Of a stretch of DNA of 64,000 nt, positions 146 to 63,147 are shown piece after piece. The position numbers and the translations under genes were made by a program. The first letter of the stretch is position 1. Every line of letters begins with the position of its first letter. Location of the stretch: positions 992,001-1,056,000 of the forward strand of contig JANJGN010000052.1 of assembly GCA_026770705.1 (NCBI GenBank), given 5' to 3'. Source of the stretch: Isurus oxyrinchus. Taxonomy: Eukaryota. The notes beneath the pieces were generated by a model that had not been told where the DNA came from, did not search any database, and saw nothing but the letters and a program-made list of their open reading frames with translations.

Positions 146-514
146 CAGAAACGTGAAGCTGGGTTACAGGATAGTAGTTGTAACTATTACTGCTGTCAAA
201 TTCTATTCTGAAAAAATAAGGTCCTGCATCTTCCCGTCTGATGTTCTTTATAATCAGGGAACAGTCGCCATCTTTCAGGTCTCCAGACAGCCGGGTCCGA
301 TGGCGGAACCGTGGTAACTCGTGACTGTGATCCTTGGAGTGAAAGGCAATAGGAGCCCAGGGAATCTGTTTCTCATTATTAAACCAGACTCCACCTCGCG
401 GTTGGTTTTCCAGACACGATGGATAACTGTAATGACAAGGAATCTGTACACACGAACCTTCCTGCGCTGTCACCTCTCGTGGAGTGTCACCTTTCCACTC
501 TTGTGAGGGTTCAA
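146..514 (-). CDS. Siglec-like gene A, second V-set Ig exon (V2)
   Basis: Acceptor tttctctccccag| and donor TCTG|gtaag; 369 nt, phase 1-1, open. Siglec V-set pattern: GSCVQIPC, GDCSL (B-E strand Cys pair) and F-strand YFFRIE with the sialic-acid-binding Arg. Confidence 0.9.
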
Positions 515-579
515 CTGGGGAGAGAAATCTCAATATTTAACTCTGGATGGTTTGTGGATCCACTAGACTCAACTTTACA

Positions 580-1400
580 GATGAGGCTGAATTGGGGGGA
601 TGGTTAATACTGAGGAGAATGGCAACAAATTATTTTGGCAGGATGAATAGAAAAACAGAATATTATTTAAATGGAGACAGGCTGCAGAATGCAGGACAGA
701 GGGATCTGGGTGTCCTTGTACATGAATCACAGAAAGTCAGCATTCAGGAACACCACGGAATGAGGAAGGCAAGTGGAATGTTGGCCTTTATTGCAAAGGG
801 ATGGAGTATAAAAGGAGGGACGTCTTGCAACAGCTGCACAGGGTGAGATTGTATCAGGAGCAGTGTGTACAGTTCTGGTCTCCTTACTTAGGGAGGGATA
901 GACTCTGCATTGGAGGCAGTTCAGAGGAGGTTCACTGGGCTGATTCCTGGGATTAAAGGGTTTGTCCTGTGAGGAAATGGTGAGCAGGTTGGGCCTGTAT
1001 CCATTGGAGTTTAGAAGAATGAGGGGTGACCTTATTGAAACATATCCGATTCCGAGGGGGCTTGACAGGGTGGATGCTGGGAGGATGTTTGCCCCTCGTG
1101 GGGGAATCTAGAACCAGGGAGCACAGTTTCGGAATGAGGACTCTCCCATTTAAGACTGAGATGAGGAGGAATTTCCTCTCTCAGAGGGGCGCTAGCCTGT
1201 GGAATTCTCTTCCCCAGAGAGCAGTGGAGGCTGGGCCATTGAATAGACTCAAGGCTGAGTGAGGCAGGTTTTTGATCGACAAGGGAGTCAAGGGTTTGGG
1301 GGACAGGCAGGAAAATGGAGTTAAGGCCACAACCAGATCTGCGAGAGTAGGCTCGGGGGGCCGAATGGCCTGCTCAAGTCCCTATTTCTTATGTTCCTAC
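580..1400 (+). mobile_element. CR1-like LINE 3' fragment (copy at ~34378-35200)
   Basis: Degenerate RT C-terminus (YYLNG..QRDLGVLVHESQK..ASGMLAFI; RRNFLSQR..LWNSLP) and CR1-type tail. Confidence 0.8.
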
Positions 1401-1959
1401 ATTCTTACCTTCTTGAAATATTAAAGCTGCAGAATAAACATGCAAGTGACTGACCTGCTCGACCCACCTTCCATCTGGGGGTCCCATGGGGAGGACCCTT
1501 CCTGAGCCAGATCCACCAGCCAACATGGTCTGGATCTGAGCACAGGAGACACGGGGGGGTGTGACTAACAGGCTCCTTGTGACAGGCCCCGTCTGTCCAA
1601 TGGCTGGCTTTCAGCTGCCAAGGCCAGAGTGGTCCTTGCTAAAACCGGCTCAGGACAGGTCAGGACACCTGTGCAGATCCCCTCCAGCGCTGCAGCCTCT
1701 GTACAAACCCCTCATGCGCTTGTGGAGAGACACAAACAAGGCTGCACATTACCGAGGAGAATCCCCTCTACGGACTAAGGGGCTGACTCATCACCTTAAA
1801 CTCAGCAAATGAGGAGGCTCTCACTCGGTATCGGGACTTGGCATTCACTCAATAAAAATAATCAAATGACATTTTGGTCAGAAATCTAAGGAGGTTGTAC
1901 ATTCCCTCAAAAATAAGACTCAAGCTGGGGTCGAGGGTCAAAGGGCAACAACTTATATT

Positions 1960-3570
1960 TACACAACAACTTGAACATGACAAATCACCCCAAGGTGCTA
2001 CACAGGAGCGTCATAAAACAAAGTATGTCACCCAGACACATGTGGAGATATTAGCGACAGCTGGCCAGAAGAGGACGGTGTTATGGAGAATCTTCAAAGA
2101 GGGATGAAATGGATAGTGAGAGAGAGAGAGATAGAGATAGAGAGAGAGAGAGAGAGGGACGGAGAGGGGTTGAGGGAGGGTATTACAGAGCTCGGGCCCC
2201 AGGCAGCTGAAGGCACGGCCGCCGATGTTGGAGTGATGGGACCGGGGGATGGTCAAGAGGCTGGAATTGGAGGAGAGCAGAGACCTCAGAGGGTTGGAGG
2301 GGCTGGAGGAGGTTACAGAGATAGGGAGGGTTGTAGTGATTGGAGGAGTTACAGAGATAGGGAGGGTTGTAGAGGCTGGAAAATTGAAGAGAGATTGGGA
2401 GAGTGTAGGGTATGGAGGAGTTTGCAGAGCTAGAGAGGTTTGTAGTGGCTGGAGGAGTTTGCAGAGATTGGTAGGTTTGTTGGGCAGGATGATTTTACAG
2501 ATATAGGGAAGCGGTGGAGGCTTGAAGAGGTTACAGAGAATGGGATGGTTGTAGGTACTGGAGGAGGATGAGGAGATTACAGGGATAATGAGGAAACAAA
2601 GATGAAAATTGTGACATTGAGACTTTGCTTGACCAGGAGCCAGTCTCGGTCATCGAGCAGAGCGGGTGATGAGGGAACGGGACTTGGTGTGAGTAAGGAC
2701 GTGGTCAGCAGTTTTGGATGGCCTCAAGTTTATGGAGTGTAGAGCGTGTTGTTGGAACAGTCGAGTCTGGAGGTAATGAAGGCGTGGATGAGGGTTTCAG
2801 CAGCAGATGAGCTGAGACAGGGTGATGTCGTGCGATGTTACGGAGGTGGAAATAGACGGTGTTAGTGAGGGCGCAGATGTGAGGCCGGAAGCTCATCTCA
2901 GGATCAAATGGGACAACAAAGCTGTGAACAGATTGGCTTCAATCTCAGAGAGCTGCCAGGGAGAGGAATGGAGTTGGTAGCGAGGGAACAGAGTTTGGAG
3001 TGGGGAATGAAGACAATGGCTTCAGTCTTTCCAATATTTAATTGGAGGGAATTTCTGCCCATCCAGTACTGGATGTCGGATAAGCAGCCTGATAATTTAG
3101 CAGCAGTGGAGGAGTCGAGAGAGGTGGTGGTGAGGTAGAGCTGGGGATCCTCAGTGGACAGGTGAAAACTAACAGTGTTCAGATGATGCTGCAAAGCCAT
3201 TGCAAGTGATTCTCTGGCTACGATGAGATGGATAAGAATGGAGCCAGGGGAGAGCAGTCCCACCCAGCTGGACAACAGTGGAGAGGTGTTGGAGGAGGAT
3301 GGTGTGGTCGAGCATGTCAAAGGCTGCAGACAGATCGAGAAGGACGAGGAGGGAAAGTTGACCTTTGTCACAGTCACACAGGATGCCATTTGTGACCTTG
3401 ATAAGAGTTGTTTCAGCACAGTGGCTGGGGTGGGAACCTGATTGGAGGGATTCAAACATGGAGTTCCGGGAAAGATGGGAACGGATTCGGGAGATGGAAA
3501 CACGTTCAAGGACTTTGCAGGGGAAAGAGAGGCTGGAGATGGGACGGGGGTTTACATGGACAGTGTGAGG
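1960..3570 (-). mobile_element. L2-like LINE fragment (copy at ~35780-37360)
   Basis: RT motifs LLDLSAAFDxLDH, LQLNIGKTE, GGRAFSCLGPEL; internal purine-rich repeat. Confidence 0.82.
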
Positions 3571-3823: not shown

Positions 3824-4198
3824 CAGAAACGTGAAGCTGGGTTTCAGGACGGTCGTTGTATCTATTCCTGTTGTCAAATTCTAGGCTGAATAAATAATAT
3901 CCTGCATCTTCCCGTCTGACATTGTTTATAATCAGGGAACAGTCACCATCTTTCAGGTCTCCAGACAGCCGGGTCCGATGGTGGAACCTTATTAACTTGC
4001 GATTGTGATTCTTGGAGTGAAAGGCTATAGACCGTTCATTCCATGTTTCCCAATTCCTTCTCATATACCAGAATCCGACTGGTGATCTCGCTACTAAATA
4101 TGATGGATAACTGTAATTACATGGAATCTGTACACACGAACCTTCCTGCGCTGTCACCTCTCCTGGAGTGTTGACTTTCCACACTTGTGATAGTCCAA
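3824..4198 (-). CDS. Siglec-like gene A, first V-set Ig exon (V1); essential Arg replaced by Ser
   Basis: Acceptor ttctctccgtag|, donor TCTG|gtaag; 375 nt, open. Cys pattern conserved, but the F strand reads YYLFSLE (AGC at 3885-3887). Confidence 0.88.
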
Positions 4199-4601: not shown

Positions 4602-5526
4602 TGTGATGTAAGTATAATAATTTTCATAATATTTTATAGTATATTGTGAAGTAGGTTTATGGGGGTACGCATGATGGGTCTGCATGTGATTTAAGTACAT
4701 TTGGAGTTAATTAGATTGGAAGTTTAAAATGATCAAAAGGAGCTAGGTGCTTGACATGCTATTGAGGAAACATGGATGCTGCTTAGCATGGAAGGTATGA
4801 AGAGAATTTGCATTTTTATTTCAATGAAGGGGTTGTTGGATTTCAAAGGAATCTTAGCTTGTTTACAACTAGCCAGATAAGCAAGACTAAGGAATGTGCT
4901 TATTTTTCTCAAAGGCTCCTGGCAATATGGGCACCACGAAAGAATTTGTTATGAGGAAGAGACAGTTTCAAAAACATTTGGAACAATAGAATTTTCATGT
5001 TACAAAGAGACAAATATATATCTATCAGGGAGAATGAAAGGCTATGTGTCAGAATGCCATGTAAGATCTAACACGAGTGTGTGATATAGTCTTAATGAAA
5101 CCTCAAGCATTTGTGCACAAGCCTGCTATCCAACAGAACTGAAGTTGGGGAAAAGCCACTTGGAATTCCTCTGTGCAGGGTATTGCTATTGTATTGTGTT
5201 AACTTGCTGAGTTGTTTTAAATCTAACATCTATTTTTAGTCTGTTGCCTTAAAGGGAGTGTAACTGGGAGTCAGGTTAATTTGGAATTTTAAGAATTATT
5301 ATAGTGGTAATTGTAGAGTTATGTATGTGCTTGAAATCTTTTATTTTGAGAGCAAGAATATTAATTTAATTTTCAAATCTCTAAAGGTCTTGGTGTAATT
5401 ATTGCTTCTGAATTCAGTGCACACATCTCATAATAAATACAAATTGCAAAATCATTATGATAGTGTGACCACCTTTCTCTCATGGACTTGGTCTGCCTGG
5501 CACACATCACCTGCCAAGTGATAACA
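4602..5526 (+). mobile_element. Putative solo LTR, family 1
   Basis: TG...CA ends, CTAT duplicated on both sides, homologous to 45791-46686. Confidence 0.7.
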
Positions 5527-5530
5527 CTAT

Positions 5531-13051: not shown

Positions 13052-13091
13052 CTTGGAGAAGTGACAGGAGGAAGTAAGATTTCCCGATCAT
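13052..13091 (-). CDS. Gene A leader (signal peptide) exon MIGKSYFLLSLLQ
   Basis: ATG at 13091, 40 nt, donor CAAG|gtaat, phase 1. Joins either V exon in frame (LLQ-VGLSQ or LLQ-VEPSQ). Four conserved copies in the window. Confidence 0.8.
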
Positions 13092-16357: not shown

Positions 16358-16497
16358 TCAAACAGTCTGTCGACTTCCTTTCACTGTTTGTCTCTCCCAG
16401 ACACAGACTCCAGCGATAGTGATAACCACAGCCACAAGGAATATCACAGCTCGTATTCCCAGGATCAGGATCACGTGCAGAATCTCTCCTCCACTGT
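16358..16497 (-). CDS. Gene C TM exon with intramembrane Arg and short tail
   Basis: ttctctag|, phase 1; SGGEILHVILILGIRAVIFLVAVVITIAGVCVWERQTVKGSRQTV then TGA. Confidence 0.82.
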
Positions 16498-18171
16498 CTA
16501 GAGAACACACAGAAAGAAATCATCACTGACTCTCCGCTTTCAATCTCTCACTCTGGCTGAACAATCAAGCTTCATATCACTGCAACATTTGCTGTAATAT
16601 TGACCCATCCACTGGGATTCAATGTGGAATGAATGTTTTCATTGTAAACACTCTAAGAGTGGACAATCGGAACTTTCCCCTTAGCGTGGAACATTGGTGA
16701 GAATGGATCATTGTGCTGTTGGACTCCCTGTCCAATGTTTCTCTCCGTCGCTGTGTACAGGATTGTGCTGTAGAAAATTCTGGAAACGTTTAGTGCAGCG
16801 TGGAAATCCATCTCGGACGCGTGTGCGAATCGGGCATTTTCGAGATGGACTCCCCCACGGACTTACACCCCCCGCTTAATAAACAGTTCCAATCTTTACC
16901 CAGAGAGAGGGGAGAATGTGGAACTCGCTCCCACTGTGAGTGATTGAGGTGAACAGTATCGATGTATTTAAGGGGCAGGAGGGTCGGTAACCAGAGGGAC
17001 ACAGATTGATGAACCGGAGGGGGAGATGAGGAGAATTTGTTTTGACAGAGCGAGTTGTTGTGATCTGGAAGGTGCTGCCTGAAAGGGCGGTGGAAGCAGA
17101 TTCAATAGGAACTTTCAAAAGGGAAATTGGATAAACACTTGAAGGAGGAAGATGGGGGCAAAGTGGAGTGGTGGTTAGTGGATCTGATTGGATAGATCAT
17201 TGAAAGACCTGGCACAGGCACAATGGGCTGAATGGCCTCCTCCTGTGCTGTATCATTCTCTGCTTCCATTATCTCTCCCCCAGTCAGTAACCACTCCAGA
17301 TCCCTCTTGAAGGTGACAGAGAATCAGCAACCACCACACCCACTGACAGCACATTACCGAGGATCCCTACTCTCTGGGAAAAGATGAAGTCCCCAACATC
17401 CAGCCTATTCCTGCTTCCCAGAGAGTGTAACCCTTCAGGGAGGCGCTGAGGAAGTTTTCAATAAAATGAGTTATCAAATCTACCATTTGAGAAATAATTT
17501 AATTCTGATGATCTCAATGCTTGTGGAGCAAACTGGGAAGTAGATTTGCTTGAAAAGCTGGGAAACACAAGGATTAAGTGCTACAATGCCACCACTGGTG
17601 GAAGGCTGTAACTACAGCGTGACGTTTACATAGGCAGTCATCATTATAAACAGGGGCATTGGACATATTGGGAATTATGTGCACGGAAATAGTGAGAACA
17701 CGATGTAATCTTTTCACCAGCAAGAATTCTCGTACTAAACCTCTTCACCTCTGTTTTAATCTCAGATACACAAAAAAAATCACAGAATCAGATAAGGAGG
17801 AGTTGGGACTAGTTCTTCGTCAAAGGGTTAGGTTTCAGGTACCTCCTTAAAGGGAGAGAGAGAGAGTTGGAGAAGCAGATAGTATCTACGAGTGCCTCTA
17901 TGCATCTGAGTGTTTGTACGAGTAATTTCCATATTCTTCCATAAATATGAATGGGAACACGAATCCCAGAATTCAGCCCACTCTCCAGTGCAGTACTGAG
18001 GGAGGTCAGGTAACCCATGAGGGAGTCTTGTGCCAGTGTGTTTGTTTGTGAGTGTGTCTTTGTGTGTGGTCATATATGTGTGTCTACACGTGTCTATTTA
18101 GGTCTGTATGTTTGAGGGTGTTTGTGTAGTGTTCGAATCTGTGAGAGATGTTGAAGTCTGTGTACACTCAC

Positions 18172-18320
18172 ATTCCACAGTGATGGTTATGAACCCCTCC
18201 ACTGCTCCATGTTCATTCTCTGAACACATTGATAGTGTCCAGTGTCCCTGGATGTAACGTGAAGAATCACCAACCACAGCTCATTGTTGGAACTTGTTCT
18301 AATCATTGGGACGTTAAGAT
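18172..18320 (-). pseudogene. Gene C C2 exon remnant (5' half replaced by an unrelated ~180-bp segment)
   Basis: Homology to the 282-nt C2 exons ends at ~18320; upstream intron homology resumes at ~18505. Confidence 0.8.
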
Positions 18321-18646: not shown

Positions 18647-18943
18647 CTTGCACAGTTAGTACGAGGGTCCGCTCCGATGAAACAGATGGATATCTCACTC
18701 TGCAGCTGAGATTGTGTCCGTGGTGTTTGAGTGATGGGATCAGGGTCAGAACAGAAGTATAGGTCAGAGTGACACCATGCTGAGTTACAGTGTTTGAGAC
18801 TGATCCAGGTACGTCAGTGGGAGTGTCCCAGGTTAAGACAGGTGCTGCTGTTCCATTGCACGTTGCGTTGAAGGTGCAGCTTACATCCACACGCTTTCCT
18901 GCAATAATTTCAGCAGGGAATATCGTGGGTTTATCTGTGAAAT
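18647..18943 (-). CDS. Gene C Ig domain-2-like exon (intact frame; gene probably a pseudogene)
   Basis: 297-nt paralog of 32920-33216 with canonical splice sites. Confidence 0.8.
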
Positions 18944-19800
18944 CTAACAGACAGAGAATGGATCCTTTTAGAGAAATATAACGTGAAGCATCAGTTCAAA
19001 TAGAAATCACAGTCCCACAAGAGAAAGCACTTTTACAAGGATGATATCAGAACTGAGAGGTTACAATGATCAGGAAAGATTTTCTTGCTCTTTGGCAGTA
19101 GTGTTTCTGTCTCTCAGCTTAATACACGTTCACTCCGAGACATGTGAATTGAGAACACTGGATGAGAGAAGAGGCTCAGACCAGAGATTGGAGTTAAAAG
19201 CAGAATACTGCGGATGCTGGAAATCTGTAACCAAAACAAAAATTGCTGGAAAGACTCAGCAGGTCTGACAGTATCAGTGGAGAGGAAGACAGGGTTAACG
19301 TTTCGCGTCCGTATGACTCTTCATCAGACCAAAGGTTTGAGTTCACTGGCTTCTCATTTCCTCAGTGATCTGGGTGATTTATCACCTTGTGGTTTGTTGG
19401 ATCTTGCTGTGCACAAACTGCCTGCTGTGTTTAACATCTGTGACTACAATTCAGGAATAATTTCATTGGCTGTGAAGGGATTTGGATCCTCCTGAGGTGG
19501 TAAATTGCGCTGCAGAAATGCACATCTTTCTTTTATCGATACGTCAGACTTTTAAACAGGACAGGAGAGATTGATGGGTGTGGTAACCTGATAATACAGT
19601 TAATGCTTTTCATCATTGATATTAAAGTGAGTATTGGAGGTTGCTTTAGGACTGAACTGGAAGCTATCATCAGGTTATTGAGAATCAGACAGTGTGTTAT
19701 AATAAGCTGTGTTTTGTGTTAATATGTAAACGTCACAGTTTGTGTTATTTCCAATGAGTGTTGAATGTGAACTGTTGAGTAATTATAACACAGCACTTAC

Positions 19801-20012
19801 CAGAAACGTGAAGCTGGGTTACAGGATAGTAGCTGTAACTATTACTGCTGTCAAATTCTATTCTGAAAAAAATAAGGTCCTGCATCTTCCCGTCTGATGT
19901 TGTTTATAATCAGGGAACAGTCGCCATCTTTCAGGTCTCCAGACAGCCGGGTACGATGGCGGAATCTTTGATCCCTGTGACTGTGACCCTCGGAGTGAAA
20001 GGCTATAGACCA
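19801..20012 (-). pseudogene. Gene C 5'-truncated, frameshifted V-set exon
   Basis: 3' half of a V exon with intact donor; the A-run near 19866 has 7 nt versus 6 in gene A; the 5' end is fused to a cytoplasmic-exon-1 acceptor. Confidence 0.85.
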
Positions 20013-23750: not shown

Positions 23751-23867
23751 TTATAAATTCCCATAAACAGAATCCTTGGCAAAATCACAGTTTGCGTAAA
23801 GATCATCATCTGTATCAGGATTGACTCCGCGGTTAGATTTCATTTCCAGATCCTTCTCATCTTTCTT
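23751..23867 (-). CDS. Gene B terminal coding exon (LYANC, SVYGNL)
   Basis: tttctattacag|, phase 0; KKDEKDLEMKSNRGVNPDTDDDLYANCDFAKDSVYGNL then TAA. Confidence 0.8.
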   Translation of the reverse strand, partial: KKDEKDLEMKSNRGVNPDTDDDLYANCDFAKDSVYGNL

Positions 23868-25363: not shown

Positions 25364-25468
25364 CTGATTCCTCAAAGCCCAACCACGCTCACAGTTTTCA
25401 TAAACAGGACCTCGATATTCATCAACACGGTGGTTCGATTTGATTCCTGCTTTCCCCTTGCCTCTCTT
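25364..25468 (-). CDS. Gene B cytoplasmic exon 2 (VYEN motif)
   Basis: tctctattacag| and CAG|gtgagt; 105 nt, phase 0-0; KRGKGKAGIKSNHRVDEYRGPVYENCERGWALRNQ. Confidence 0.7.
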
Positions 25469-25980: not shown

Positions 25981-26065
25981 CCAGGACCTGTCCGACTGCT
26001 CGCCTGGGGAGGAACTGCCCATACGCTCTGCTTGGGCTGAATGACCTCTTCCTGTGCTGCTCCCT
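25981..26065 (-). CDS. Gene B cytoplasmic exon 1
   Basis: acacacag| and CTGG|gtaagt; 85 nt, phase 2-0, which exactly bridges the TM exon and the next exon; GSSTGRGHSAQAERMGSSSPGEQSDRSW. Confidence 0.72.
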
Positions 26066-26717: not shown

Positions 26718-26814
26718 TTTCTCACACACTTGAAGATGAAGAATCCACTCAGTCCAACACTCAAACAGATTCCAGCTCCAAGCAATCCTGCTTTCCATTC
26801 ATTGGAATCTCGCC
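26718..26814 (-). CDS. Gene B transmembrane exon
   Basis: gattttacag| and GAAA|gtaagt; phase 1-2; (W)RDSNEWKAGLLGAGICLSVGLSGFFIFKCVRK, a 20-aa hydrophobic run followed by basic residues. Not shown in this frame by the ORF track. Confidence 0.85.
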
Positions 26815-28078: not shown

Positions 28079-28360
28079 ATTCCACAGTGATGGTTATGAA
28101 CCCCTGCACTGCTCCATGTTCATTCTCTGCCACACACTGATAGTCTCCCGTGTCCCTGGATGTAACGTGAGGAATCACCAACCGCAGCTCATTGTTGGAA
28201 CTTGTTCTGTTCATTGGGACATTAAGATGTCGCCACGTCAGGTTAGAAGCTGGGAAGCTCTCGACAGAGCAGATTATCACTGCAGAATTCCCCTCAATTA
28301 TATTGATCGATGAAGCGTTAATCAAATCAAGAGAAGTAAATGAGAGATTCTGTGGTGCGT
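28079..28360 (-). CDS. Gene B Ig C2 exon, copy 3
   Basis: 282 nt, canonical splice sites, near-identical to copies 1 and 2. Confidence 0.9.
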
Positions 28361-29343: not shown

Positions 29344-29625
29344 ATTCCACAGTGATGGTTATGAAACCCTCCACTGCTCCATGTTCATTCTCTGCCACAC
29401 ACTGATAGTCTCCAGTGTCCCTGGATGTAACGTGAGGAATCACCAACCACAGCTCATTGTTGGAACTTGTTCTGTTCATTGGGACATTAAGATGTCGCCA
29501 CGTCAGGTTAGAAGCTGGGAAGCTCTCGACAGAGCAGATTATCACTGCAGAATTCCCCTCAATTATATTGATCGATGAAGTGTTAATCATATCAAGAGAA
29601 GTAATTGAGAGATTCCGTGGTGCAT
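29344..29625 (-). CDS. Gene B Ig C2 exon, copy 2
   Basis: 282 nt, canonical splice sites, near-identical to copy 1. Confidence 0.9.
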
Positions 29626-31651: not shown

Positions 31652-31779
31652 ATGTCTGTGTGTGAGCACGCACCAGTGTGAATCTGTGTATGTACGCTTC
31701 TGTGTGTGAGCATGCCGGTGTGCACACGTGTACACATGTGGGCTTGTACATGAATGCTTGTTTGTGGGCACGTGTATGT

Positions 31780-31958: not shown

Positions 31959-32240
31959 ATTCCACAGTGATGGTTATGAACCCCTCCACTGCTCCATGTT
32001 CATTCTCTGCCACACACTGATAGTCTCCAGTGTCCCTGGATGTAACGTGAGGAATCACCAACCACAGCTCATTGTTGGAACTTGTTCTGTTCATTGGGAC
32101 ATTAAGATGTCGCCACGTCAGGTTAGAAGCTGGGAAGCTCTCGACAGAGCAGATTATCACTGCAGAATTCCCCTCAATTATATTGATCGATGAAGCATTA
32201 ATCATATCAAGAGAAGTAATTGAGAGATTCTGTGGTGCAT
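31959..32240 (-). CDS. Gene B Ig C2 exon, copy 1
   Basis: 282 nt, phase 1-1; APQNLSI...ICSVESFPASNLTW...DTGDYQCVAENEHG. Confidence 0.9.
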
Positions 32241-32919: not shown

Positions 32920-33216
32920 CTTGCACAGTTAGTATGAGGGTCCGCTCCGATGAAACAGATGGATATCTCACTCTGCAGCTGAGAGTGTGTCCGTGGTGTT
33001 TGAGTGATGGGATCAGGGTCAGAACAGAAGTATAGGTCAGAGTGACACCATGCTGAGTTACAGTGTTTGAGACTGATCCACGTACGTCAGTGGGAGTGTC
33101 CCAGGTTAAGACAGGTGCTGCTGTTCCATTGCACGTTGTGTTGAAGGTGCAGCTTACATCCACAGGCTTTCCTGCAATAATTTCAGCAGGGAATATCGTG
33201 GGTTTATCTGTGAAAT
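32920..33216 (-). CDS. Gene B Ig C2-type exon (Siglec domain-2-like)
   Basis: ctgttag| and CAAG|gtaag; 297 nt; DFTDKPTIFPAEIIAGKPVDVSCTFNTTCNG...LTW...LSCRV, with the extra Cys typical of Siglec domain 2. Confidence 0.9.
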
Positions 33217-33944: not shown

Positions 33945-34313
33945 CAGAAACATGAAGCTGGGTTACAGGGTAATAGTTATGGCTCGGACCATTGTCAAAT
34001 TCTATTCTGAAAAAATAAGGTCCTTCATCTTCCCGTATGATGTTGTTTATAATCAGGGAACAGTCGCCATCTTTCAGGTCTCCAGACAGCCGGGTCCGAT
34101 GGTGGAACCGTGGTAACTCGTGACTGTGATCCTTGGAGTGAAAGGCAATGGGAGCCCAGGGAATCTGTTCCTCATTATTAAACCAGACTCCACCTCGCAG
34201 TTGGTTTTCCAGACACGATGGATAACTGTAATGACATGGAATCTGTACACACGAACCTTCCTGCGCAGTCACCTCTCGTGGATTGTCACCTTTCCACTCT
34301 TGTGAGGGTTCAA
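33945..34313 (-). CDS. Gene B V-set exon V2; open frame but acceptor mutated AG>GG
   Basis: Near copy of 146-514; acceptor reads tctccccgg| at 34314-34315; donor intact. Possibly skipped or spliced at a cryptic site. Confidence 0.65.
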
Positions 34314-37618: not shown

Positions 37619-38005
37619 CAGAAACGTGAAGCTGGGTTACAGGATAGTAGCTATAACTATTTCTGCTGTCAAATTCTATTCTGAAATAATAATATCCTGC
37701 ATCTTCCCGTCTGATGTTGTTTATAATCAGGGAACAGTCGCCATCTTTCAGTTCTCCAGACAGCCGGGTCCGATGGCGGAACCGTGGTAACTCGCGATTG
37801 TGATCCTTGGAGTGAAAAGCTATGGTCCCTCTAGACCTTGTATTCCATGTATTCCATGTGTACCATTTCACGTACCAGATTCCGACACGTGCTCTCCCTA
37901 CTACACGTGCTGGATAACTGTAGTTACATGGAATCTGTACACACGAACATTCCTGCGCTGTCACCTCTCGTGGAGTTTCACCTTTCCACTCTTGTGACAG
38001 TCCAA
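37619..38005 (-). CDS. Gene B V-set exon V1 (Arg intact, YYYFRIE)
   Basis: Canonical ag/gt, 387 nt, phase 1-1, open; Siglec Cys pattern plus an extra Cys (ECSC). Confidence 0.9.
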
Positions 38006-43306: not shown

Positions 43307-43346
43307 CTTGGAGAAGTGACAGGAGGAAGTAAGATTTCCCGATCAT
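43307..43346 (-). CDS. Gene B leader exon MIGKSYFLLSLLQ
   Basis: Paralog of 13052-13091 with the same donor; upstream acceptor ctttctctttcag| near 43389 implies a 5' non-coding exon. Confidence 0.8.
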
Positions 43347-45252: not shown

Positions 45253-45501
45253 GGTAAACAGAACGTGCTGATTACTGAGCCCCGGAACACAACCAGAGAC
45301 ACAACTAGTGAGGGGGAGACCCCAGCTCCCCGGGGTCTCTCTGAAGGTCCAGTGGGAGGCGATGTTGGACATGGGAACCCCGACAATACCGACGAGCTTC
45401 TCTACGCCAACATCAACTTTTCAAAGCTGCCCGGCGGTGACAGGACTGTGCACAGGAGCGAGGACACGGAATACGCACAGATCAGGTTCCAGAAAAACTG
45501 A
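45253..45501 (+). CDS. Orphan terminal cytoplasmic exon with ITIM (LLYANI) and ITSM-like (TEYAQI) motifs
   Basis: Acceptor tttctctgtag|, phase 0, open to TGA; motif pair and spacing as in CD33-related Siglec tails (xLxYAxL ... TEYxxI). Confidence 0.85.
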   Translation, partial: GKQNVLITEPRNTTRDTTSEGETPAPRGLSEGPVGGDVGHGNPDNTDELLYANINFSKLPGGDRTVHRSEDTEYAQIRFQKN

Positions 45502-54022: not shown

Positions 54023-54088
54023 ACTATCAGTGTGTGGCAGAGAATGAACGTGGAGCAGTGGAGGGATTTATAACCATCTCTGTAGAAC
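54023..54088 (+). pseudogene. 3' remnant of a C2 exon (YQCVAENERGAVEGFITISVE)
   Basis: Homologous to the end of 28079-28360; donor gtgagt retained; 5' part absent. Confidence 0.75.
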
Positions 54089-55353
54089 GTGAGTTACACA
54101 GAATTGAACATTCTCTTGTTGTTAGCTCATGGGATGTGAGTATTGTTGACAAGGCCAGAAATTATTGCCCATTTGTAACTGCCCCTTGAGAAGGTGGTGG
54201 TGAGTTGCCTTCTTTAACCACTACATTCCCTGTGGTGTAGGCACACCCACAGTGCTGTTAGGGAGGGAGTTCCAGGATTTTGACCCAGCGACGGTGAAGG
54301 AACGGCCGATATAGTTCCAAGTCCCAGGGCAGACCACCACCACAAGTTAACCTCCAAGTCACACACCTCACTGACTTGGAACTGTCTTGGTGGAAGAGGT
54401 TAAGCGTTTGGAAGGTGCTGTCGAAGGAGCCTTGGTGAGTTGCTGCAGCGCATCTTGTAGATGGTGCACACTGCTGCCATTGTGTGCCAGTGGTGGAGGG
54501 TATGAATGTTTATGCTGATGGCTGGGCTGTCGATCAAACAAGCTGCTCCTGGATGGTGTCGAGGTTCTTGAGTGTTGTTGGAGCTGCACTCATCCAGCCA
54601 AGTGGAGATTATTCCATCACACTCCTGACTTGTGCCTTGTTCGATGGTGGACAGGCTTTGGGGAGTCAGGAGGTGAGTTACTCACCACAGAGTACCCAGT
54701 CTCTGACCCGCTCTTGTAGCCACATTATTTCCTGTTGCCGGGTTGTTGCCAGGGCCAATAGCCTTTGCTGTATCCAGTATCATCAGCTGATTCCTGATGT
54801 CACGTGGAGTCAATCGAATTGTCTGAAAGCTGACATCTGTGATGCTGGGACCCTCTGGAGGAGGCCGAGATGGAGCATCCACTCAGCACTTCTGGCTGAA
54901 CATGGTTGCCAATGCTTCAGCCTTGTCATTTGCACTGATGTGCTGAGCTCCCCCATCATTAAGGATGGGGATATTTGTGGAACATCCTCCTCCTGTTAGA
55001 TCTTTAATTGTCCATCACCATTCATGACTGGATGTGGCAGGACTGCAGAGCTTAGATCTGACCCGTTGGTTGTGGGATCGCTTTGCTCTGTCTATAGCAT
55101 GTTGTTTCCGCTGTTTGGTGTGTATGTAGTCCTGTGTGTCACCTCAGCAGCTTGGCACCTCTGTTATATGTGAATCCTCCTTATAGAAACCTGCATGTAC
55201 ATGGATATTATCAATAAATATTACATAGATAAATGTTATTTGTATAGACCTTTCATGCATAGACAATGTCACTTCACAAGTTCAGAATTACTACATGTAC
55301 ATAGGGAACCATTCTCAAACTGTACCGGAGTCATTCATTGGCTGATTTTACAG

Positions 55354-55450
55354 GGCGAGATTCCAATGAATGGAAAGCAGGATTGCTTGGAGCTGGAATC
55401 TGTTTGAGTGTTGGACTGAGTGGATTCTTCATCTTCAAGTGTGTGAGAAA
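55354..55450 (+). pseudogene. Inverted duplicate of the gene B TM exon
   Basis: Matches 26718-26814 with intact splice sites; no intact ectodomain exons seen upstream. Confidence 0.75.
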
Positions 55451-56784: not shown

Positions 56785-56824
56785 ATGATCAGGAAATCTT
56801 ACTTCCTCCTGTCACTTCTCCAAG
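56785..56824 (+). pseudogene. Leader exon copy MIRKSYFLLSLLQ
   Basis: Paralog of 13052-13091; no V exon follows. Confidence 0.7.
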
Positions 56825-58487: not shown

Positions 58488-58937
58488 GTAAGTAACGGAA
58501 CGATTGGAATTCACTTCCACCACCAACACAGTCCTTTGTTGATGTTGTGACTTTATAAAGACAGATTCCAATGATTGATGCCTTTGAAAGATTTCTACTG
58601 ATTATTGAGATCTGGGTGTGAGGCTCAAGTCTGTTGTACAGAACATCTTTCTGGATCAAAGGATGAGGGAAGTGCAGAGACATGAGCTTTGGGACATCCT
58701 GAGGAGGTGAAAGGTGCTATAGAAATGCAAATCCTTCATTGTTTTTCTTTCTTAAAGTCTTGTAACTCTCTGCAGAGCACCTATCATCCCACAGAGAATC
58801 AAATTAGTCTGTGAAGACATTGTCTAAAAGCAGTTCTGATCTCTCGAGAGCTGTCGGACAAGAGGTGAGGTCTCATTAACTCCTTTCTCTTTCACAGCTT
58901 GAGAGTGAGAAGTGGATGGAATATCTGGGAGTGGACG

Positions 58938-58977
58938 ATGGTCGGGAAATCTTACTTCCTCCTGTCACTTCTCCAAG
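58938..58977 (+). CDS. Gene D leader exon MVGKSYFLLSLLQ
   Basis: ATG, 40 nt, CAAG|gtaat donor. Confidence 0.72.
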
Positions 58978-59668
58978 GTAATATCATCGTCAGTATGGAC
59001 AGATTTATGTTTAACAGTTTTTGTAAAAGATCATTCTTATCTCTTTAATCTGTAACGTCCTGCAACGCAACCAAACAACTTCCCAGATCTCTGTGTTACT
59101 CCAATTCCGGCCTCTTGACCATCCCCCGATTCCCATCACTCCAATTGTGGCGGCCGGGCCTTCAGCTGCCTGGTGCCTGAGCTCTGGAATTCACTCCCTA
59201 AACCTCGGTGATGGAGGAGATCAGAGGGTTTCATTTTACTGAGAATCACCACGACCACATCACAGCTGCAGTCAGAATAGACAGAGAGTCCAGCCCTCGC
59301 ACTTCCTGCACAGTTTCACCATAGCAACCACAATAAGGAAGTAAAATAACTGAAAGTTAAACCGAAGCCAAACCAGTCGGTGTAGAGAGATGAGATGTTT
59401 ACACAGTTTCCCTGTGTATCTTGTAGACACTGTGTTGGGTGGAAGACTGGCTTCACTAAACAGGGTCCTGAGGACCATGAGCCAATGTAGAATGAACTTG
59501 TTCACTCCTGTGTCCAGGATTCTCTTCCATCCATTGTGAAACCTTGGGGAGTTCCTTGTGTGTCCTGTAGTTAGTCCACACTGCAGCCACTGTGCCCCAG
59601 TGATGGAGGGAGTGGATATCAAGTCTAGTGGATTGACAAACCATCCAGAGTTAAATATTGACATTTCT

Positions 59669-59698
59669 ATTACCCTGTAACCCGGCTTCACGTTTCTG
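59669..59698 (+). pseudogene. Gene D V-exon remnant (last ~30 nt only)
   Basis: Pre-acceptor intron ttaaatattgacatttct is joined directly to attaccctgtaacccggcttcacgtttctg|gtaag. Confidence 0.85.
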
Positions 59699-60170
59699 GT
59701 AAGTGCTGCGTTATAATTACTCAACAATTCACATTCAACACTCAATGGGAAATAACACTAACTGTGACGTTTACATATTAACACAAAACACAGCTTATTA
59801 TAACACACTGTCTGATTCTCAATAACCTGGTGATCGCTTCCAGTTCAGTCCTAAAGCAACCTCTAATACTCACTTTAATATCAATGATGAAAAGCATTAA
59901 CTGTATTATCAGGTTATCCACTCCCATCAATCTCTCCTGTCCTGTTTAAAAGTCTGACGTATCGATAAAAGAAAGATGTGCATTTCTGCAGCGCAATTTA
60001 CCACCTCAGGAGGATCCAAATCCCTTCACAGCCATTGAAATTATTCCTGAATTGTAGTCACAGATGTAAAACACAGCAGGCAGTTTGTGCACAGCAAGAT
60101 CCAACAAACCACAATGTAATAAATCACCCAGATCACTGAGGAAATGAGAAGCCAGTGAACTCAAACCTCT

Positions 60171-60208
60171 GGTCTGATGAAGAGTCATACGGACTCGAAA
60201 CGTTAACT
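60171..60208 (+). ncRNA. Hammerhead-ribozyme-like motif in a Penelope-derived repeat
   Basis: CTGATGA-a-GAGTC atacg GACTC-GAAAC-GTT; core and stem II intact, stem I weak. Confidence 0.5.
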
Positions 60209-60557
60209 CTGTCTTCCTCTCCACTGATACTGTCAGACCTGCTGAGTCTTTCCAGCAATTTTTGTTTTGGTTTCAGATTTCCAGCATCCGCAGTATTCTG
60301 CTTTTAACTCCAATCTCTGGTCTGAGCCTCTTCTCTCATCCAGTGTTCTCAATTCACATGTCTCGGAGTGAACGTGTATTAAGCTGAGAGACAGAAACAC
60401 TACTGCCAAAGAGCAAGAAAATCTTTCCTGATCATTGTAACCTCTCAGTTCTGATATCATCCTTGTAAAAGTGCTTTCTCTTGTGGGACTGTGGTTTCTA
60501 TTTGAACTGATGCTTCACGTTATATTTCTCTAAAAGGATCCATTCTCTGTCTGTTAG

Positions 60558-60854
60558 ATTTCACAGATAAACCCATGATATTCCCTGCTGAAATTATTGC
60601 AGGAAAGCGCGTCAATGTAAGCTGCACCTTCAACACAACGTGCAATGGAACAGCAGCACCTGTCTTAACCTGGGACACTCCCACTGACGTACGTGGATCA
60701 GTCTCAAACACTGTAACTCAGCATGGTGTCACTCTGACCTATACTTCTGTTCTGACCCTGATCCCATCACTCAAACACCACGGACACACTCTCAGCTGCA
60801 GAGTGAGATATCCATCTGTTTCATCGGAGCGGACCCTCGTACTAACTGTGCAAG
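60558..60854 (+). CDS. Gene D Ig domain-2-like exon
   Basis: 297 nt, canonical sites, open frame. Confidence 0.8.
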
Positions 60855-61185
60855 GTAATTACATACACTTTCATTCTACATCAGCACTCCCTCAGCGCTG
60901 ACCCTCTGACAGTGCAGCCCGTTCTCAGTATCCACATTCTAAGGCCTCTCTAAGTGCTTCACAGTCGATAGAAGTTAATTGATCTTTATTTGATTATTGC
61001 TGAATGAAGAGACAAGCTGTCTAAACTTTACATCTCGCACATACCATTCTCCATGGCAACACCTCCACCTATCAGAGACCACTTGCCAACCAATCAGCAC
61101 TCTCTTCCCATTAAGTATAAATTGTTGTTCACTTTCTGTTGGTAATCCTGTGAACGGGCTTCTTGATTCCTGCCCTGAGATCTGA

Positions 61186-61329
61186 ATGTCCAAATGAACA
61201 GAACAAGTTCCAACAATGAGCTGTGGTTTGTGATTCCTCACGTTACATCCAGGGACACTAGAGACTATCAGTGTGTGGCAGAGAATGAACATGGAGCAGT
61301 GGAGGGATTCATAACCATCACTGTGGAAC
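61186..61329 (+). pseudogene. Gene D C2 exon remnant
   Basis: Same 5' replacement as 18172-18320. Confidence 0.8.
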
Positions 61330-63007
61330 GTGAGTGTACACAGACTTCAACATCTCTCTCAGATTCGAACACTACACAAACACCCTCAAACATACACATC
61401 TAAGTAGACACATGCAGACACACATATATGACCACACAGAAAGACACACTCACACACAAACACACTAACACACACTCCCCTGTGGGCTACCTGACCTCCC
61501 TCAGTACTGCCCTGGAGAGTTGGCCTGAATTCTGGGATTTGTGTTCCCATTCATATTTATGCAAGAATATGGAAATTACAAAGTCTATTACAGACACTCA
61601 GATGCATAGAGACACTCACAGATACTCTCTGCCTCTCCAACTCTCTCTCTCCCTTTAAGAAGCTTCCTGAAAGCTCACCCTTCGAACAATCACCAGTCCC
61701 AAATCCTCCTTATCTGATTTGTGTGATTTTCTTTGTGTATTTGAGAGTAAGAGAGAGGTGGAGAGGTTTAGGAGGAGAATTCCTGTTGGTGAAAAGCTTA
61801 CATCATGTTCCCACCTTTCCAGTGCCCATATTTCACATGATGTCCAATGTCCTTGTTCATAATGGGAATTGCCTATGTAAACATCACGCTGTAGTTACAG
61901 TCTCCTACCAGTGGTGGCATTGTAGCACTTAATCCTTGTGTTTCCCAGCTTTTCAAGCAACACCACTTCCCAGTTTGCTCCACAAGCTGTGAGTTCATTG
62001 GAATTCAATTATTTCTCAAACGGTAGATTTGATGTCATTTTATTGAAAACTTCCTCAGTGCCTCCCTGAAGGGTTTACACTCTCTGGGAAGCAGGAATAG
62101 GCTGGATGTTGGGGAGTTCATCTTTTCCCAGAGAGTAGTGATCCTCGGGAATGTGCTGTCAGTGGGAGTGGTGGTTGCTGATTCTCTGTCGCCTTCAAGA
62201 GGGATCTGGAGTCGTTACTGACTGGGGGAGAGATCATGGAAACGGAGAATGATACAGCACAGGAGGAGGCCATTCAGTCCATTGTGCCTGTGCCAGGTCT
62301 TTCAATGTTCTATCCAATCAGATCCACTAACCACCATTCCAATTTGCCCCCATCTTCCTCCTTTAAGTATTTATCCAATTTCCCTTTTGAAAGTTCCTAT
62401 TGAATCTGCTTCCACCGCCCTTTCAGGCAGCACCTTCCAGACCACAACAACTCGCTCTGTCAAAACAAATTCTCCTCATCTCCCCCTCCGGTTCGTCAAT
62501 CTGTGTCCCTCTGGTTACCGACCCTCCTGCCCCTTAAGTACATTGATACTGTTCACCTCAACCACTCCCTGTGGGAGCGAGTTCCACATTCTCCCGTCTC
62601 TCTGGGTAAAGATTGGAACTGTTTATTAAGCGGGGGGTGTAAGTCCGTGAGGGAGTCCATCTCGATCCTGCCCGATTCGCACACGCGTCCGAGATGGATT
62701 TCCACCCTGCACTAAACGTTTCCAGAATTTTCTACAGCACAATCCTGTACACAGCGATGGAGAGAAACATTGGACAGGGAGTCCAACAGCACAATGATCC
62801 ATTCTCACCAATGTTCCACGCTAAGGGGAAAGTTCCGATTGTCCACTCTTAGAGTGTTTACAATGAAAACATTCATTCCACATTGAATCCCAGTAAATGG
62901 CTCAATATTACAGCAAATGTTGCAGTGATATGAAGCTTGATTGTTCAGCCAGAGTGAGAGATTGAAAGCGGAGAGTCAGTGATGATTTCTTTCTGTGTGT
63001 TCTCTAG

Positions 63008-63147
63008 ACAGTGGAGGAGAGATTCTGCACGTGATCCTGATCCTGGGAATACGAGCTGTGATATTCCTTGTGGCTGTGGTTATCACTATCGCTGGAGTCT
63101 GTGTCTGGGAGAGACAAACACTGAAAGGAAGTCGACAGACTGTTTGA
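63008..63147 (+). CDS. Gene D TM exon with intramembrane Arg and short tail
   Basis: Inverted paralog of 16358-16497; CGA at 63052-63054; TGA at 63145-63147. Confidence 0.82.

What the first reader, a model, noticed from the sequence alone, without database searches (positions are those of the whole stretch)
146..63147. Paired-receptor Siglec-like cluster: one ectodomain kit, three signalling back-ends
Seen: near-identical leader/V/C2 exons sit with (i) an Arg-containing TM and short tail (genes C and D) and (ii) an uncharged TM with a multi-tyrosine YxN tail (gene B); a third tail type, an ITIM+ITSM-like exon, lies at 45253 without linked ectodomain exons. Established: mammalian CD33-related Siglecs form inhibitory/activating pairs (Siglec-5/14, Siglec-11/16) that share ectodomains through gene conversion. 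Inference: this is an independently or anciently expanded paired sialic-acid receptor system in a probable cartilaginous fish. I cannot search the literature to confirm novelty. The TM and short tail exons are invisible in the ORF track and could be missed by automated annotation.
Basis: partly seen in the sequence, partly recalled or inferred. Interest (0 to 1): 0.88.

Follow-up and report, generated by a model that had tools for sequence, protein, structure and literature searches.

The report
Shark Siglec cluster, mostly broken copies
This stretch of a shark genome belongs to a large family of Siglec-type immune receptor genes that come with three kinds of signalling end, but here only one gene is whole and the two "activating" copies have lost their sugar-binding exon.

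Summary
The V-set exons are Siglec-like: the 17 best solved-structure matches are all Siglecs (E about 1e-15), and the sialic-acid arginine and cysteine pattern are kept. All three tail modules are real and occur in RefSeq models of many sharks: an Arg-containing TM with a 12-residue tail, an uncharged TM with a YxN tail, and an ITIM+ITSM exon. RNA-type contigs show spliced C2-to-Arg-TM and Ig3-to-Arg-TM joints.

In this window only gene B is complete (YxN tail), and it matches a basking-shark model exon by exon. Gene A runs off the window. Both Arg-TM copies lack a working V exon:
- C has no leader, half a V exon and a frameshift.
- D has a roughly 340-bp deletion inside its V exon.
- Both share an Ig3 exon cut short by a repeat.

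The ITIM/ITSM exon stands alone on the opposite strand. No exon crosses an assembly gap, but gene B spans one, and the orientation of the B'-D block rests on scaffolding.

So the paired design holds for the family, not as a working pair here. Automatic annotation already predicts these genes, and this scan found the same design many times elsewhere in this genome. I found no paper on it.

The parts
13052..13091 (-). Gene A leader exon (MIGKSYFLLSLLQ, phase-1 donor)
   Evidence: Pattern search with GT donor. tblastn P0011 residues 1-20 at 100%. Translation.
3824..4198 (-). Gene A first V-set exon (V'). Splice sites are intact, but the essential Arg is replaced by Ser (YLFSLEF).
   Evidence: Pfam V-set 3e-13.
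146..514 (-). Gene A second V-set exon (V). It is intact, with FFRIE. The rest of gene A lies beyond the window start.
   Evidence: PDB phmmer gives Siglec-5, MAG, Siglec-8, Siglec-7 and CD33 at about 1e-15.
43307..43346 (-). Gene B leader exon
37619..38005 (-). Gene B first V-set exon (V'). It is intact, with AG and GT splice sites and YYFRIE.
   Evidence: Pfam Ig_CD22 8e-12 and V-set 7e-10.
33945..34313 (-). Gene B second V-set exon (V). The reading frame is open, but the acceptor is GG instead of AG, so it is probably skipped.
32920..33216 (-). Gene B C2-set exon (domain 2)
   Evidence: Pfam C2-set_2. It aligns to domain 2 of MAG, CD33, Siglec-10 and Siglec-5.
31959..32240 (-). Gene B Ig3a exon. 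The assembly gap 31780-31947 begins 11 nt after its donor.
29344..29625 (-). Gene B Ig3b exon
   Evidence: PDB matches are I-set/C2 domains, including MAG d4 at 2e-15.
28079..28360 (-). Gene B Ig3c exon
26718..26814 (-). Gene B uncharged transmembrane exon (WKAGLLGAGICLSVGLSGFFIFKCVRK)
   Evidence: 94% identical to Cetorhinus P0201 residues 425-456.
25981..26065 (-). Gene B cytoplasmic exon 1 (GSSTGRGHSAQAERMGSSSPGEQSDRSW)
25364..25468 (-). Gene B cytoplasmic exon 2 (…VDEYRGPVYENCERGWALRNQ)
   Evidence: 89% identical to P0201 residues 485-519. Splice sites.
23751..23867 (-). Gene B last exon (…DDLYANCDFAKDSVYGNL, then stop). It carries two YxN motifs, and the last one also fits the ITIM pattern SxYxxL.
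   Evidence: 82% identical to P0201 residues 519-557..
19800..20010 (-). Gene C V-exon remnant. The 5' half is replaced by a copy of the cytoplasmic-exon repeat, there is a +1 T frameshift in PYFF(F)RIE, the donor is kept, and no leader lies upstream.
18647..18943 (-). Gene C C2 exon, intact
18134..18318 (-). Gene C Ig3 remnant. The 5' half is replaced by repeat sequence, and there is also a 1-bp deletion.
16358..16497 (-). Gene C Arg-TM and short-tail exon (…ILHVILILGIRAVIFLVAVVITIAGVCVWERQTVKGSRQTV, then stop)
   Evidence: 85% identical to P0139 residues 174-219.
45253..45501 (+). Orphan terminal exon with an ITIM (LLYANI) and an ITSM-like motif (TEYAQI). The acceptor and stop are intact. 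No TM or ectodomain exon lies upstream on the + strand.
   Evidence: 82% identical to Cetorhinus P0003 residues 314-403.
54025..55450 (+). B' fragment: the last part of an Ig3 exon plus an uncharged TM exon (55354-55450, 100% amino-acid identity to gene B). It has no tail exons. Upstream it ends 146 nt from gap 53734-53877.
56785..56824 (+). Extra leader exon (MIRKSYFLLSLLQ) in a duplicated 0.7-kb unit
58938..58977 (+). Gene D leader exon (MVGKSYFLLSLLQ), intact
59668..59697 (+). Gene D V-exon remnant. Only the last 30 nt and the donor are left, and the acceptor is deleted.
60558..60854 (+). Gene D C2 exon, intact
   Evidence: RNA-type contigs join 59697 to it and join it to 63008.
61182..61329 (+). 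Gene D Ig3 remnant, with the same repeat breakpoint as gene C and the donor kept
   Evidence: The joint 61329 to 63008 appears in one contig.
63008..63147 (+). Gene D Arg-TM and short-tail exon, differing from gene C by 1 nt in 140

Best explanation
The window is a piece of a very large, fast-duplicating cluster of Siglec-type receptor genes in a shark. These genes are the elasmobranch counterpart of CD33-related Siglecs.

The family is built from exon modules: a leader, one or more V-set exons, a C2 exon, a variable number of Ig3 exons, and one of three ends.
1. An uncharged TM plus an ITIM/ITSM tail. By analogy with CD33-related Siglecs this would recruit SHP-type phosphatases and inhibit (inferred).
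2. A TM with a central arginine and a 12-residue tail. By analogy with Siglec-14/-15/-16 this would pair with an acidic residue of an ITAM adaptor and activate (inferred).
3. An uncharged TM plus a tail with YENC, YANC and a terminal SVYGNL. The last exon is a diverged relative of the ITIM exon. I infer Grb2-type SH2 docking with a terminal ITIM-like site.

In this window, birth-and-death evolution has left one complete gene: B, with end type 3. It uses its first V exon, because the second has lost its acceptor. Also present are the 5' part of its tandem twin A, and debris. The debris consists of two Arg-TM copies (C and D) without a usable V exon, a truncated copy of B's 3' part (B'), and a lone ITIM/ITSM exon on the opposite strand.

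The three-back-end design is therefore a property of the family. This window does not contain a working inhibitory/activating pair.
For: Siglec identity:
- The V exon's 17 best PDB matches are all Siglecs at 1e-15 to 8e-14. The next non-Siglec match is at 3e-7.
- YFFRIE aligns with YFFRVE of Siglec-5, and all three V cysteines align.
- Pfam finds V-set, Ig_CD22 and C2-set_2.
- The C2 exon aligns to domain 2 of MAG, CD33, Siglec-10 and Siglec-5.

Family:
- 1409 relatives were found. [quoted passage not shown]
- All three tails occur in those models.

Gene B:
- Every exon has AG/GT splice sites and compatible phases.
- It matches Cetorhinus P0201 exon by exon.

Decay of C and D. Their identity to each other is mosaic (80-100% per 100 nt), and the exons are no better kept than the flanking introns. 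C2 differences are 5 nonsynonymous to 2 synonymous.

Expression of the module: GT..AG joints V-end to C2, C2 to Arg-TM and Ig3 to Arg-TM appear in contigs of 3, 3 and 1 of the 4 runs laid.

Tree: the window's V domains fall in a clade of 143 domains from 84 named shark or ray proteins and 16 unnamed ones. This clade is sister (SH-like support 0.88) to tetrapod and lungfish CD33-related Siglecs.

Tail homology: TDDDLYANCDFAK in tail exon 3 against TEDILYANINFSK in the ITIM exon of P0017.
Against: - The runs laid are only guessed to be RNA and are contigs. Their letters match gene C in the C2 exon (4 of 4 positions) but match neither C nor D in the TM exon. They show that the module is spliced somewhere in a close relative's transcriptome, not which locus is expressed.
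- Gene B is joined across an assembly gap. The number of Ig3 exons, and even the unity of the gene, rests on scaffolding.
- D keeps an intact leader, C2 exon and Arg-TM exon that would splice in frame, so 'debris' may be too harsh for D.
- No binding or signalling was tested.
- Akula et al. 2014 (PMC4016189) found no FcR gamma chain in the shark genome data then available, so the adaptor for the Arg-TM form is unknown.
- The tree is a FastTree of about 120 columns and lacks labelled tetrapod MAG, CD22, Siglec-1 and Siglec-15.
Confidence: 0.75

Rival explanations
1. D, and similar loci, are working genes for a V-less chain of about 150 residues: leader, C2 domain and Arg-TM. Such a chain could be a ligand-independent partner or competitor for the ITAM adaptor, comparable in outline to V-less CD33 isoforms.
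For: D's leader (58938-58977), C2 exon (60558-60854) and Arg-TM exon (63008-63147) are all intact, and their phases (1, 1-1, 1) would splice in frame. The C2-to-TM joint is seen in contigs. A third transcribed copy with the same repeat-truncated Ig3 exists (record 21).
Against: No leader-to-C2 joint (58977 to 60558) is among the joints listed. The leader contigs carry letters of other copies at 58937 and 58941. C has no leader at all. The exons are no better conserved than the introns between C and D, and C2 changes are 5 nonsynonymous to 2 synonymous.
Confidence: 0.12
2. The broken and inverted copies are products of misassembly of a highly repetitive cluster. In the real genome C and D would be intact V-C2-TM genes, and the pair would be functional.
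For: Three gaps cut the window into four contigs. The B'-D block is tied in only by scaffolding. Copies are 93-98% alike. The +1 T in C's V exon lies in a T homopolymer.
Against: The lesions lie inside contigs, not at gaps. C's V exon is fused to another repeat. D has a clean internal deletion that keeps both flanks. The Ig3 breakpoint is shared by C and D, which differ by about 5% elsewhere. A transcript contig from a third copy has the same truncated Ig3.
Confidence: 0.08
3. One gene has alternative 3' ends. On this reading the Arg-TM exon at 16.4 kb is an alternative last exon of gene B, so a single ectodomain is joined to two back-ends by splicing rather than by separate genes.
For: C has no leader of its own and lies 3.7 kb downstream of B's last exon on the same strand. 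An Ig3-to-Arg-TM joint exists in one contig.
Against: That contig carries the repeat-truncated Ig3 of the C/D type, not B's Ig3. RefSeq models with the Arg-TM end have their own leaders. The transcript would have to read through B's terminal exon and 11 kb of sequence.
Confidence: 0.05

Closest known systems
Mammalian CD33-related Siglecs, including the paired receptors Siglec-5/14 and Siglec-11/16
   Same: - An N-terminal V-set domain with the FRxE arginine and the Siglec cysteine pattern, followed by a C2-set domain 2.
- A terminal exon with an ITIM followed about 20 residues later by TxYxxI.
- Activating relatives with a basic TM residue and a very short tail.
- Clustered, fast-duplicating genes, with frequent loss of the essential Arg (here gene A's first V; also P0139 and P0024).
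   Different: - The shark and ray genes form a separate clade.
- There are often two or more tandem V exons.
- There is a third tail type with YxN motifs.
- An earlier, untested note of this scan places hepcidin copies just beyond this window. In humans, from my own knowledge, hepcidin lies beside MAG and CD22 rather than in the CD33-related cluster.
- In this window the activating copies have no V exon, so there is no working pair.
RefSeq models of shark Siglec-like genes, for example Cetorhinus maximus 'Siglec-13 isoform X1' (P0201), Carcharodon carcharias 'CD33-like' (P0157) and Scyliorhinus torazame 'Siglec-12' (P0006)
   Same: - Gene B matches P0201 exon by exon at 63-97%.
- The ITIM exon is 82% identical to the tail of P0003.
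- The Arg-TM exon is 80-85% identical to the ends of P0006 and P0139.
   Different: - Gene B has three Ig3 exons against two in P0201, and carries a second V exon that is disabled.
- C and D are truncated versions of the P0139 and P0024 type.
CD22 and Siglec-10/G tails (from my own knowledge: they carry a Grb2-binding YxN site beside ITIMs)
   Same: Gene B's tail has three YxN motifs, and its last tyrosine fits the ITIM pattern.
   Different: - The V domain is far from CD22 (E 7e-4 against 1e-15 for CD33-related Siglecs and MAG).
- There is no canonical ITIM+ITSM pair in gene B's tail.
- Function was not tested.

Membership tests
Siglec (I-type lectin) family | N-terminal V-set Ig domain closest to Siglec V-sets | tested here: met
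   The top 17 PDB sequences are all Siglecs, at 1.2e-15 to 7.8e-14. The first non-Siglec is at 2.7e-7. Pfam finds V-set and Ig_CD22.
Siglec (I-type lectin) family | Essential arginine on strand F (FRxE) that binds the sialic acid carboxylate | tested here: met
   It is present in A_V, B_V' and B_V, where FFRIE or YYFRIE aligns to YFFRVE of Siglec-5. It is replaced by Ser in A_V'.
Siglec (I-type lectin) family | Three cysteines in the V domain (two on strand B, one on strand E) and an extra cysteine in domain 2 | tested here: met
   SCVQIPC and GDCSL align with LCVLVPC and KNCSL of Siglec-5. The C2 exon has three cysteines (SC…TC…SC) and aligns to domain 2 of CD33 and MAG.
Siglec (I-type lectin) family | Binding of sialylated glycans | not testable with these tools
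   This needs recombinant V-C2-Fc protein on a glycan array, with an Arg-to-Ala control.
CD33-related Siglec subgroup | Cytoplasmic ITIM followed by a membrane-distal ITIM-like or ITSM motif | tested here: met
   Exon 45253-45501 encodes LLYANI, then 22 residues, then TEYAQI. In this window the exon is linked to no TM or ectodomain exon.
CD33-related Siglec subgroup | V domain groups with CD33-related Siglecs rather than MAG, CD22, Siglec-1 or Siglec-15 | tested here: inconclusive
   The shark/ray clade is sister (0.88) to a clade holding primate, bat, tree-shrew, turtle, frog and lungfish CD33-related models, but also a Heptranchias MAG-like protein. PDB scores for Siglec-5 and MAG are equal. 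There were no labelled tetrapod MAG, CD22, Siglec-1 or Siglec-15 sequences in the tree.
Paired activating/inhibitory receptors (Siglec-5/14 type) | Two linked genes with near-identical ligand-binding domains | tested here: not met
   In this window both Arg-TM copies lack a usable V exon. Only the C2 exons are near-identical.
Paired activating/inhibitory receptors (Siglec-5/14 type) | One partner with a basic TM residue and a short tail, the other with ITIMs | tested here: met
   At exon level both are present: GIR in the TM with a 12-residue tail, and the ITIM/ITSM exon. At protein level both occur in RefSeq models of other sharks.
Paired activating/inhibitory receptors (Siglec-5/14 type) | Association of the basic TM residue with a DAP12, DAP10 or FcR-gamma type adaptor | not testable with these tools
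   No adaptor sequence was at hand. PMC4016189 reported no FcR gamma in the shark data of 2014.
Paired activating/inhibitory receptors (Siglec-5/14 type) | Ectodomain homogenised by gene conversion | tested here: inconclusive
   C against D identity is mosaic, with tracts of 97-100% that include introns next to tracts of 80-93%. This is compatible with conversion, but no donor was identified.

The most novel reading that the evidence does not exclude
C/D-type loci may be a maintained sub-family rather than debris. At least three copies share the same repeat-truncated Ig3 exon and one of them is transcribed. D could encode a V-less chain of leader, C2 and Arg-TM that engages the ITAM adaptor without binding sialic acid, which would make it a built-in modulator of the activating arm. 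Separately, the YxN tail of gene B, which derives from the ITIM exon, may be a third signalling class of Siglec not described in mammals.
Probability: 0.12. Interest if true: 0.6.

Novelty: new member of a known kind. Interest (0 to 1): 0.45.

Why it matters
Published work states that fish genomes lack CD33-related Siglecs (PMC7226832, on teleosts). Paired inhibitory/activating Siglecs are described for mammals (PMC4042635, PMC13358205).

A large shark family with CD33-type ITIM/ITSM tails, an Arg-TM activating form and a third YxN tail would push this receptor logic back to early jawed vertebrates. It also gives an independent case of modular tail swapping.

This window adds the birth-and-death side of that picture: V-less activating copies, an orphan inhibitory exon, and reciprocal disabling of tandem V exons. 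It is a weak place to demonstrate the pair itself. Better examples were already noted by this scan elsewhere in the same genome, and RefSeq already predicts such genes in other sharks.

Tried and rejected
1. Exon-specific constraint between C and D. At first the Arg-TM exon (1 difference in 140 nt) and the C2 exon (7 in 297) looked better kept than the intron (93%). A 100-nt sliding comparison showed that the high-identity tracts include flanking introns, so I dropped the claim.
2. Search for an ITIM-type TM exon or the membrane-proximal exon upstream of 45253 on the + strand. A relaxed tblastn found none.
3. Pfam on the repeat ORFs at 30900-31778, 38382-38618, 15592-16152, 36702-37304, 10981-11529 and 27172-27780. 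There was no hit. Only 46705-47124 is a reverse-transcriptase fragment.
4. Three paper searches for shark or cartilaginous-fish Siglecs. They found only a passing mention in the whale shark genome paper.
5. The look-up of encoding contigs for P0139, to see gene neighbours in another shark.
6. Species identity. Run names are coded, and no run held more than 0.42 of the words.
Gene models were judged through tblastn of database proteins against the window.
8. No structure or complex prediction was run, because sequence evidence for the fold was sufficient and no adaptor sequence was available.

Full report
**Layout and gaps**

The window has three runs of N: 31780-31947, 51886-52178 and 53734-53877. 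No exon or reading frame that matters crosses any of them.
- The first gap starts 11 nt after the GT donor of exon 32240-31959 and sits in CA-rich intron sequence.
- The other two lie in satellite or low-complexity DNA, with no Siglec exon within 140 nt.

The gaps cut the window into four contigs, with two consequences.
- Gene B is joined across the first gap. Its number of Ig3 exons is therefore uncertain, and strictly its unity rests on scaffolding.
- The block 53878-64000 is tied to the rest only by scaffolding, so its inverted orientation is not secure.

Self-comparison shows the following duplications:
- 1-13.4 kb is a tandem duplicate of 33.8-43.6 kb (92-95% identity).
- 15.5-19.8 kb is an inverted duplicate of 59.7-64.0 kb (94.8%).
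- 26.4-28.1 kb is an inverted duplicate of 54.0-55.8 kb (96.6%).

**What the exons are**

The V-set exon 514-146 was searched by reference against all solved structures. The 17 best sequences are all Siglecs: Siglec-5, MAG, Siglec-8, Siglec-7, CD33, Siglec-10 and sialoadhesin, at E 1e-15 to 8e-14. The first non-Siglec is at 3e-7. CD22 and Siglec-15 are much further off.

In the printed alignment to Siglec-5, YFFRIE lies on YFFRVE (the sialic-acid arginine). SCVQIPC and GDCSL lie on the Siglec cysteines. Pfam gives V-set and Ig_CD22 for the four V exons, C2-set_2 for the next exon, and Ig_3/I-set for the repeated third type. The C2 exon aligns to domain 2 of MAG, CD33, Siglec-10 and Siglec-5. 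The Ig3 exon matches generic I-set domains, including MAG domain 4.

**Relatives**

A full HMMER scan found 1409 relatives. [quoted passage not shown] The window's V exon is 91% identical to a Carcharodon model and 89% to a Cetorhinus model, so the source is a shark.

The three tails all occur in these models:
- ITIM/ITSM tails: P0003, P0157, P0017 and P0014.
- Arg-TM ends of the '…ILILGIRAVIF…KGSRQTV' type: P0006, P0139, P0024 and P0178.
- YxN tails: P0007, P0018, P0183, P0199, P0201, P0204, P0215 and P0233.

**Gene models in the window**

Models rest on tblastn of database proteins against the window and on splice sites.

*Gene B (- strand) is complete.* Its parts, in order, are:
- leader 43346-43307;
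- first V 38005-37619 (intact, YYFRIE);
- second V 34313-33945, whose acceptor is GG instead of AG;
- C2 33216-32920;
- three Ig3 exons;
- uncharged TM 26814-26718;
- three cytoplasmic exons ending at 23751.

All other sites are AG/GT with matching phases. The gene matches Cetorhinus P0201 exon by exon.

Its tail carries DEYRGP, VYENC, LYANC and a terminal SVYGNL. That makes three YxN motifs, and the last tyrosine also fits SxYxxL. The last exon is a diverged relative of the ITIM exon: TDDDLYANCDFAK against TEDILYANINFSK. The two last tail exons look like duplicates of each other.

*Gene A* shows only its leader and two V exons before the window ends. Its first V has Ser in place of the essential Arg.

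**The Arg-TM copies**

The exon at 16497-16358 (C) and at 63008-63147 (D) encodes SGGEILHVILILGIRAVIFLVAVVITIAGVCVWERQT(V/L)KGSRQTV followed by a stop. But the genes around it are damaged.

- Gene C: the V exon has lost its 5' half, including the acceptor and the CVQIPC strand. That half is replaced by a copy of the cytoplasmic-exon repeat. The remainder has an extra T that shifts the frame. No leader lies between C and the end of gene B.
- Gene D: the leader 58938-58977 is intact, but only the last 30 nt of the V exon remain, fused to the intron just upstream of the former acceptor.
- Both: the 5' half of the Ig3 exon is replaced by unrelated, high-copy sequence at the same breakpoint. C has a further 1-bp deletion.

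The Ig3 lesion therefore predates the C/D duplication, and the V lesions are independent.

C and D differ by 1 nt in 140 in the TM exon and by 7 in 297 in C2 (5 nonsynonymous, 2 synonymous). The high-identity tracts also cover the flanking introns, so this is no evidence of exon-specific selection.

The statement that near-identical leader, V and C2 exons sit with the Arg-TM exon is thus true only for C2.

**The ITIM/ITSM exon**

45253-45501 (+) has an AG acceptor and an open frame of 82 codons. It carries LLYANI and TEYAQI 22 residues apart, then a stop. It is 82% identical to the end of Cetorhinus P0003.

A relaxed search found no matching TM exon, membrane-proximal exon or ectodomain exon upstream on the + strand. 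The exon lies 1.9 kb beyond gene B's leader, on the same contig and in the opposite orientation.

The fragment B' (54025-55450, +) has the end of an Ig3 exon and a TM exon 100% identical in protein to B's. It has no tail exons. Its upstream part ends near a gap.

**Transcript evidence**

Four runs were laid on 58900-63400 at 90% likeness. They are kept as Logan contigs, are only guessed to be RNA, and their organism is coded. Contigs skip canonical GT..AG introns as follows:
- from the V donor (59697) to the C2 acceptor, in 3 runs;
- from the C2 donor to the Arg-TM acceptor, in 3 runs;
- from the Ig3 donor (61329) to the Arg-TM acceptor (63008), in one 674-nt contig that runs on into the 3' flank.

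The Arg-TM exon is therefore a spliced terminal exon, in both V-C2-TM and Ig3-TM contexts.

The letters do not pin the transcripts to this locus:
- C2 contigs carry gene C's letters at 4 of 4 listed sites.
- TM contigs differ from both C and D at 2 of 3 listed sites.
- The 674-nt contig has the same repeat-truncated Ig3 but differs from both, so it comes from a third copy of that type.
- Leader contigs carry letters of other copies.
- A leader-to-C2 joint was not among the joints listed.

**Phylogeny**

I extracted 365 V-like domains from the 243 proteins fetched, added the four window V exons, and built a FastTree on 120 columns.
- The window's V domains lie in a clade of 143 domains from 100 proteins. 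Of these, 84 are named shark or ray proteins, none is a named non-chondrichthyan, and 16 are unnamed.
- The sister clade (SH-like support 0.88) holds primate, bat, tree-shrew, rhino, marmot, elephant, turtle, frog and lungfish CD33-related models. It also holds a Heptranchias MAG-like protein.
- Gar, paddlefish, sturgeon and goby 'MAG-like' or 'CD22-like' proteins lie further out.
- The window's first V exons group with the first V of multi-V RefSeq models. The second V exons group with their later V domains. The tandem V layout is therefore old.

This fits a lineage-specific expansion of a CD33-related-like gene. The tree lacks labelled MAG, CD22, Siglec-1 and Siglec-15 anchors, so subgroup membership stays open.

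**Literature and earlier notes**

- Bornhöfft et al. (PMC7226832) write that fish genomes lack CD33-related Siglecs; their data are from teleosts.
- Reviews place paired Siglecs in mammals (PMC13358205, PMC4042635).
- I found no paper on shark Siglecs.
- Akula et al. (PMC4016189) found no FcR gamma in the shark data then available, so the adaptor for the Arg-TM form is unknown.
- This scan has already noted and followed up the same paired design at many other places of this genome, some with intact activating genes. I did not test those.
- One note places hepcidin copies 6 kb beyond this window. In humans, from my own knowledge, hepcidin lies next to MAG and CD22, which would be a synteny lead.

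**Verdict**

The family-level idea holds: Siglec-type receptors in sharks with inhibitory, activating and YxN ends. This window shows one intact gene and the wreckage of others, not a working pair.

Noticed in passing
window 34313-34315 and 3885-3887: Each of the two tandem genes has one of its two V exons disabled, in a different way. Gene B's second V has acceptor GG instead of AG. Gene A's first V has Ser for the essential Arg. In the V tree the first and second V exons group with the first and later V domains of multi-V RefSeq models, so the tandem layout is old.
   Followed up: partly
window 23966-25228: A 24-bp minisatellite of about 53 copies (89% matches) fills most of the intron between gene B's last two exons. 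In one frame it reads as a long NNQTPFSI repeat ORF, which is not an exon.
   Followed up: partly
window 13912-14922, 32375-32797, 43957-44286, 52370-53155 (also 20.2-20.6 kb and 57.8-58.2 kb): A 33-bp satellite recurs throughout the cluster on both strands, including in the intron between gene B's C2 and Ig3a exons.
   Followed up: partly
window 13542-13634 (-), 20623-20688 (-), 56249-56341 (+), 58395-58487 (+): Copies of gene B's first cytoplasmic exon (the type at 26065-25981) lie about 450 bp upstream of leader exons, inside a 0.7-kb repeat unit. The same unit replaces the 5' half of gene C's V exon. This suggests that duplication breakpoints fall between that exon and the next gene's leader.
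   Followed up: partly
proteins P0139 and P0024: Two of the four RefSeq-type models that end in the Arg-TM exon have lost the essential V-domain arginine (YHFSIE and YYFKVE). P0006 keeps it.
   Followed up: no
window 5280-5366, 38382-38618, 46464-46796 (+): A repeated ORF with a TM-like stretch (…GILGVIIAVIVVLCMCLKSFIL…) lies just upstream of the first V exons, on the opposite strand. It has no Pfam hit and no match to any Siglec model.
   Followed up: partly
window 61014-61181 and 18319-18460: The sequence that replaces the 5' half of the Ig3 exon in C and D has very high contig depth in all four runs laid, as expected of a high-copy repeat. One transcript contig starts in it and splices on to the Arg-TM exon.
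   Followed up: partly
window 20897-21151 (+) and 30897-31600 (-): There are two copies (86% identity) of an ORF reading '…CSQCGLLYMGQTKHRLGDRSDEHLRSV…'. One lies inside gene B's Ig3a-Ig3b intron next to the gap. It has no Pfam hit and is probably part of a mobile element.
   Followed up: partly
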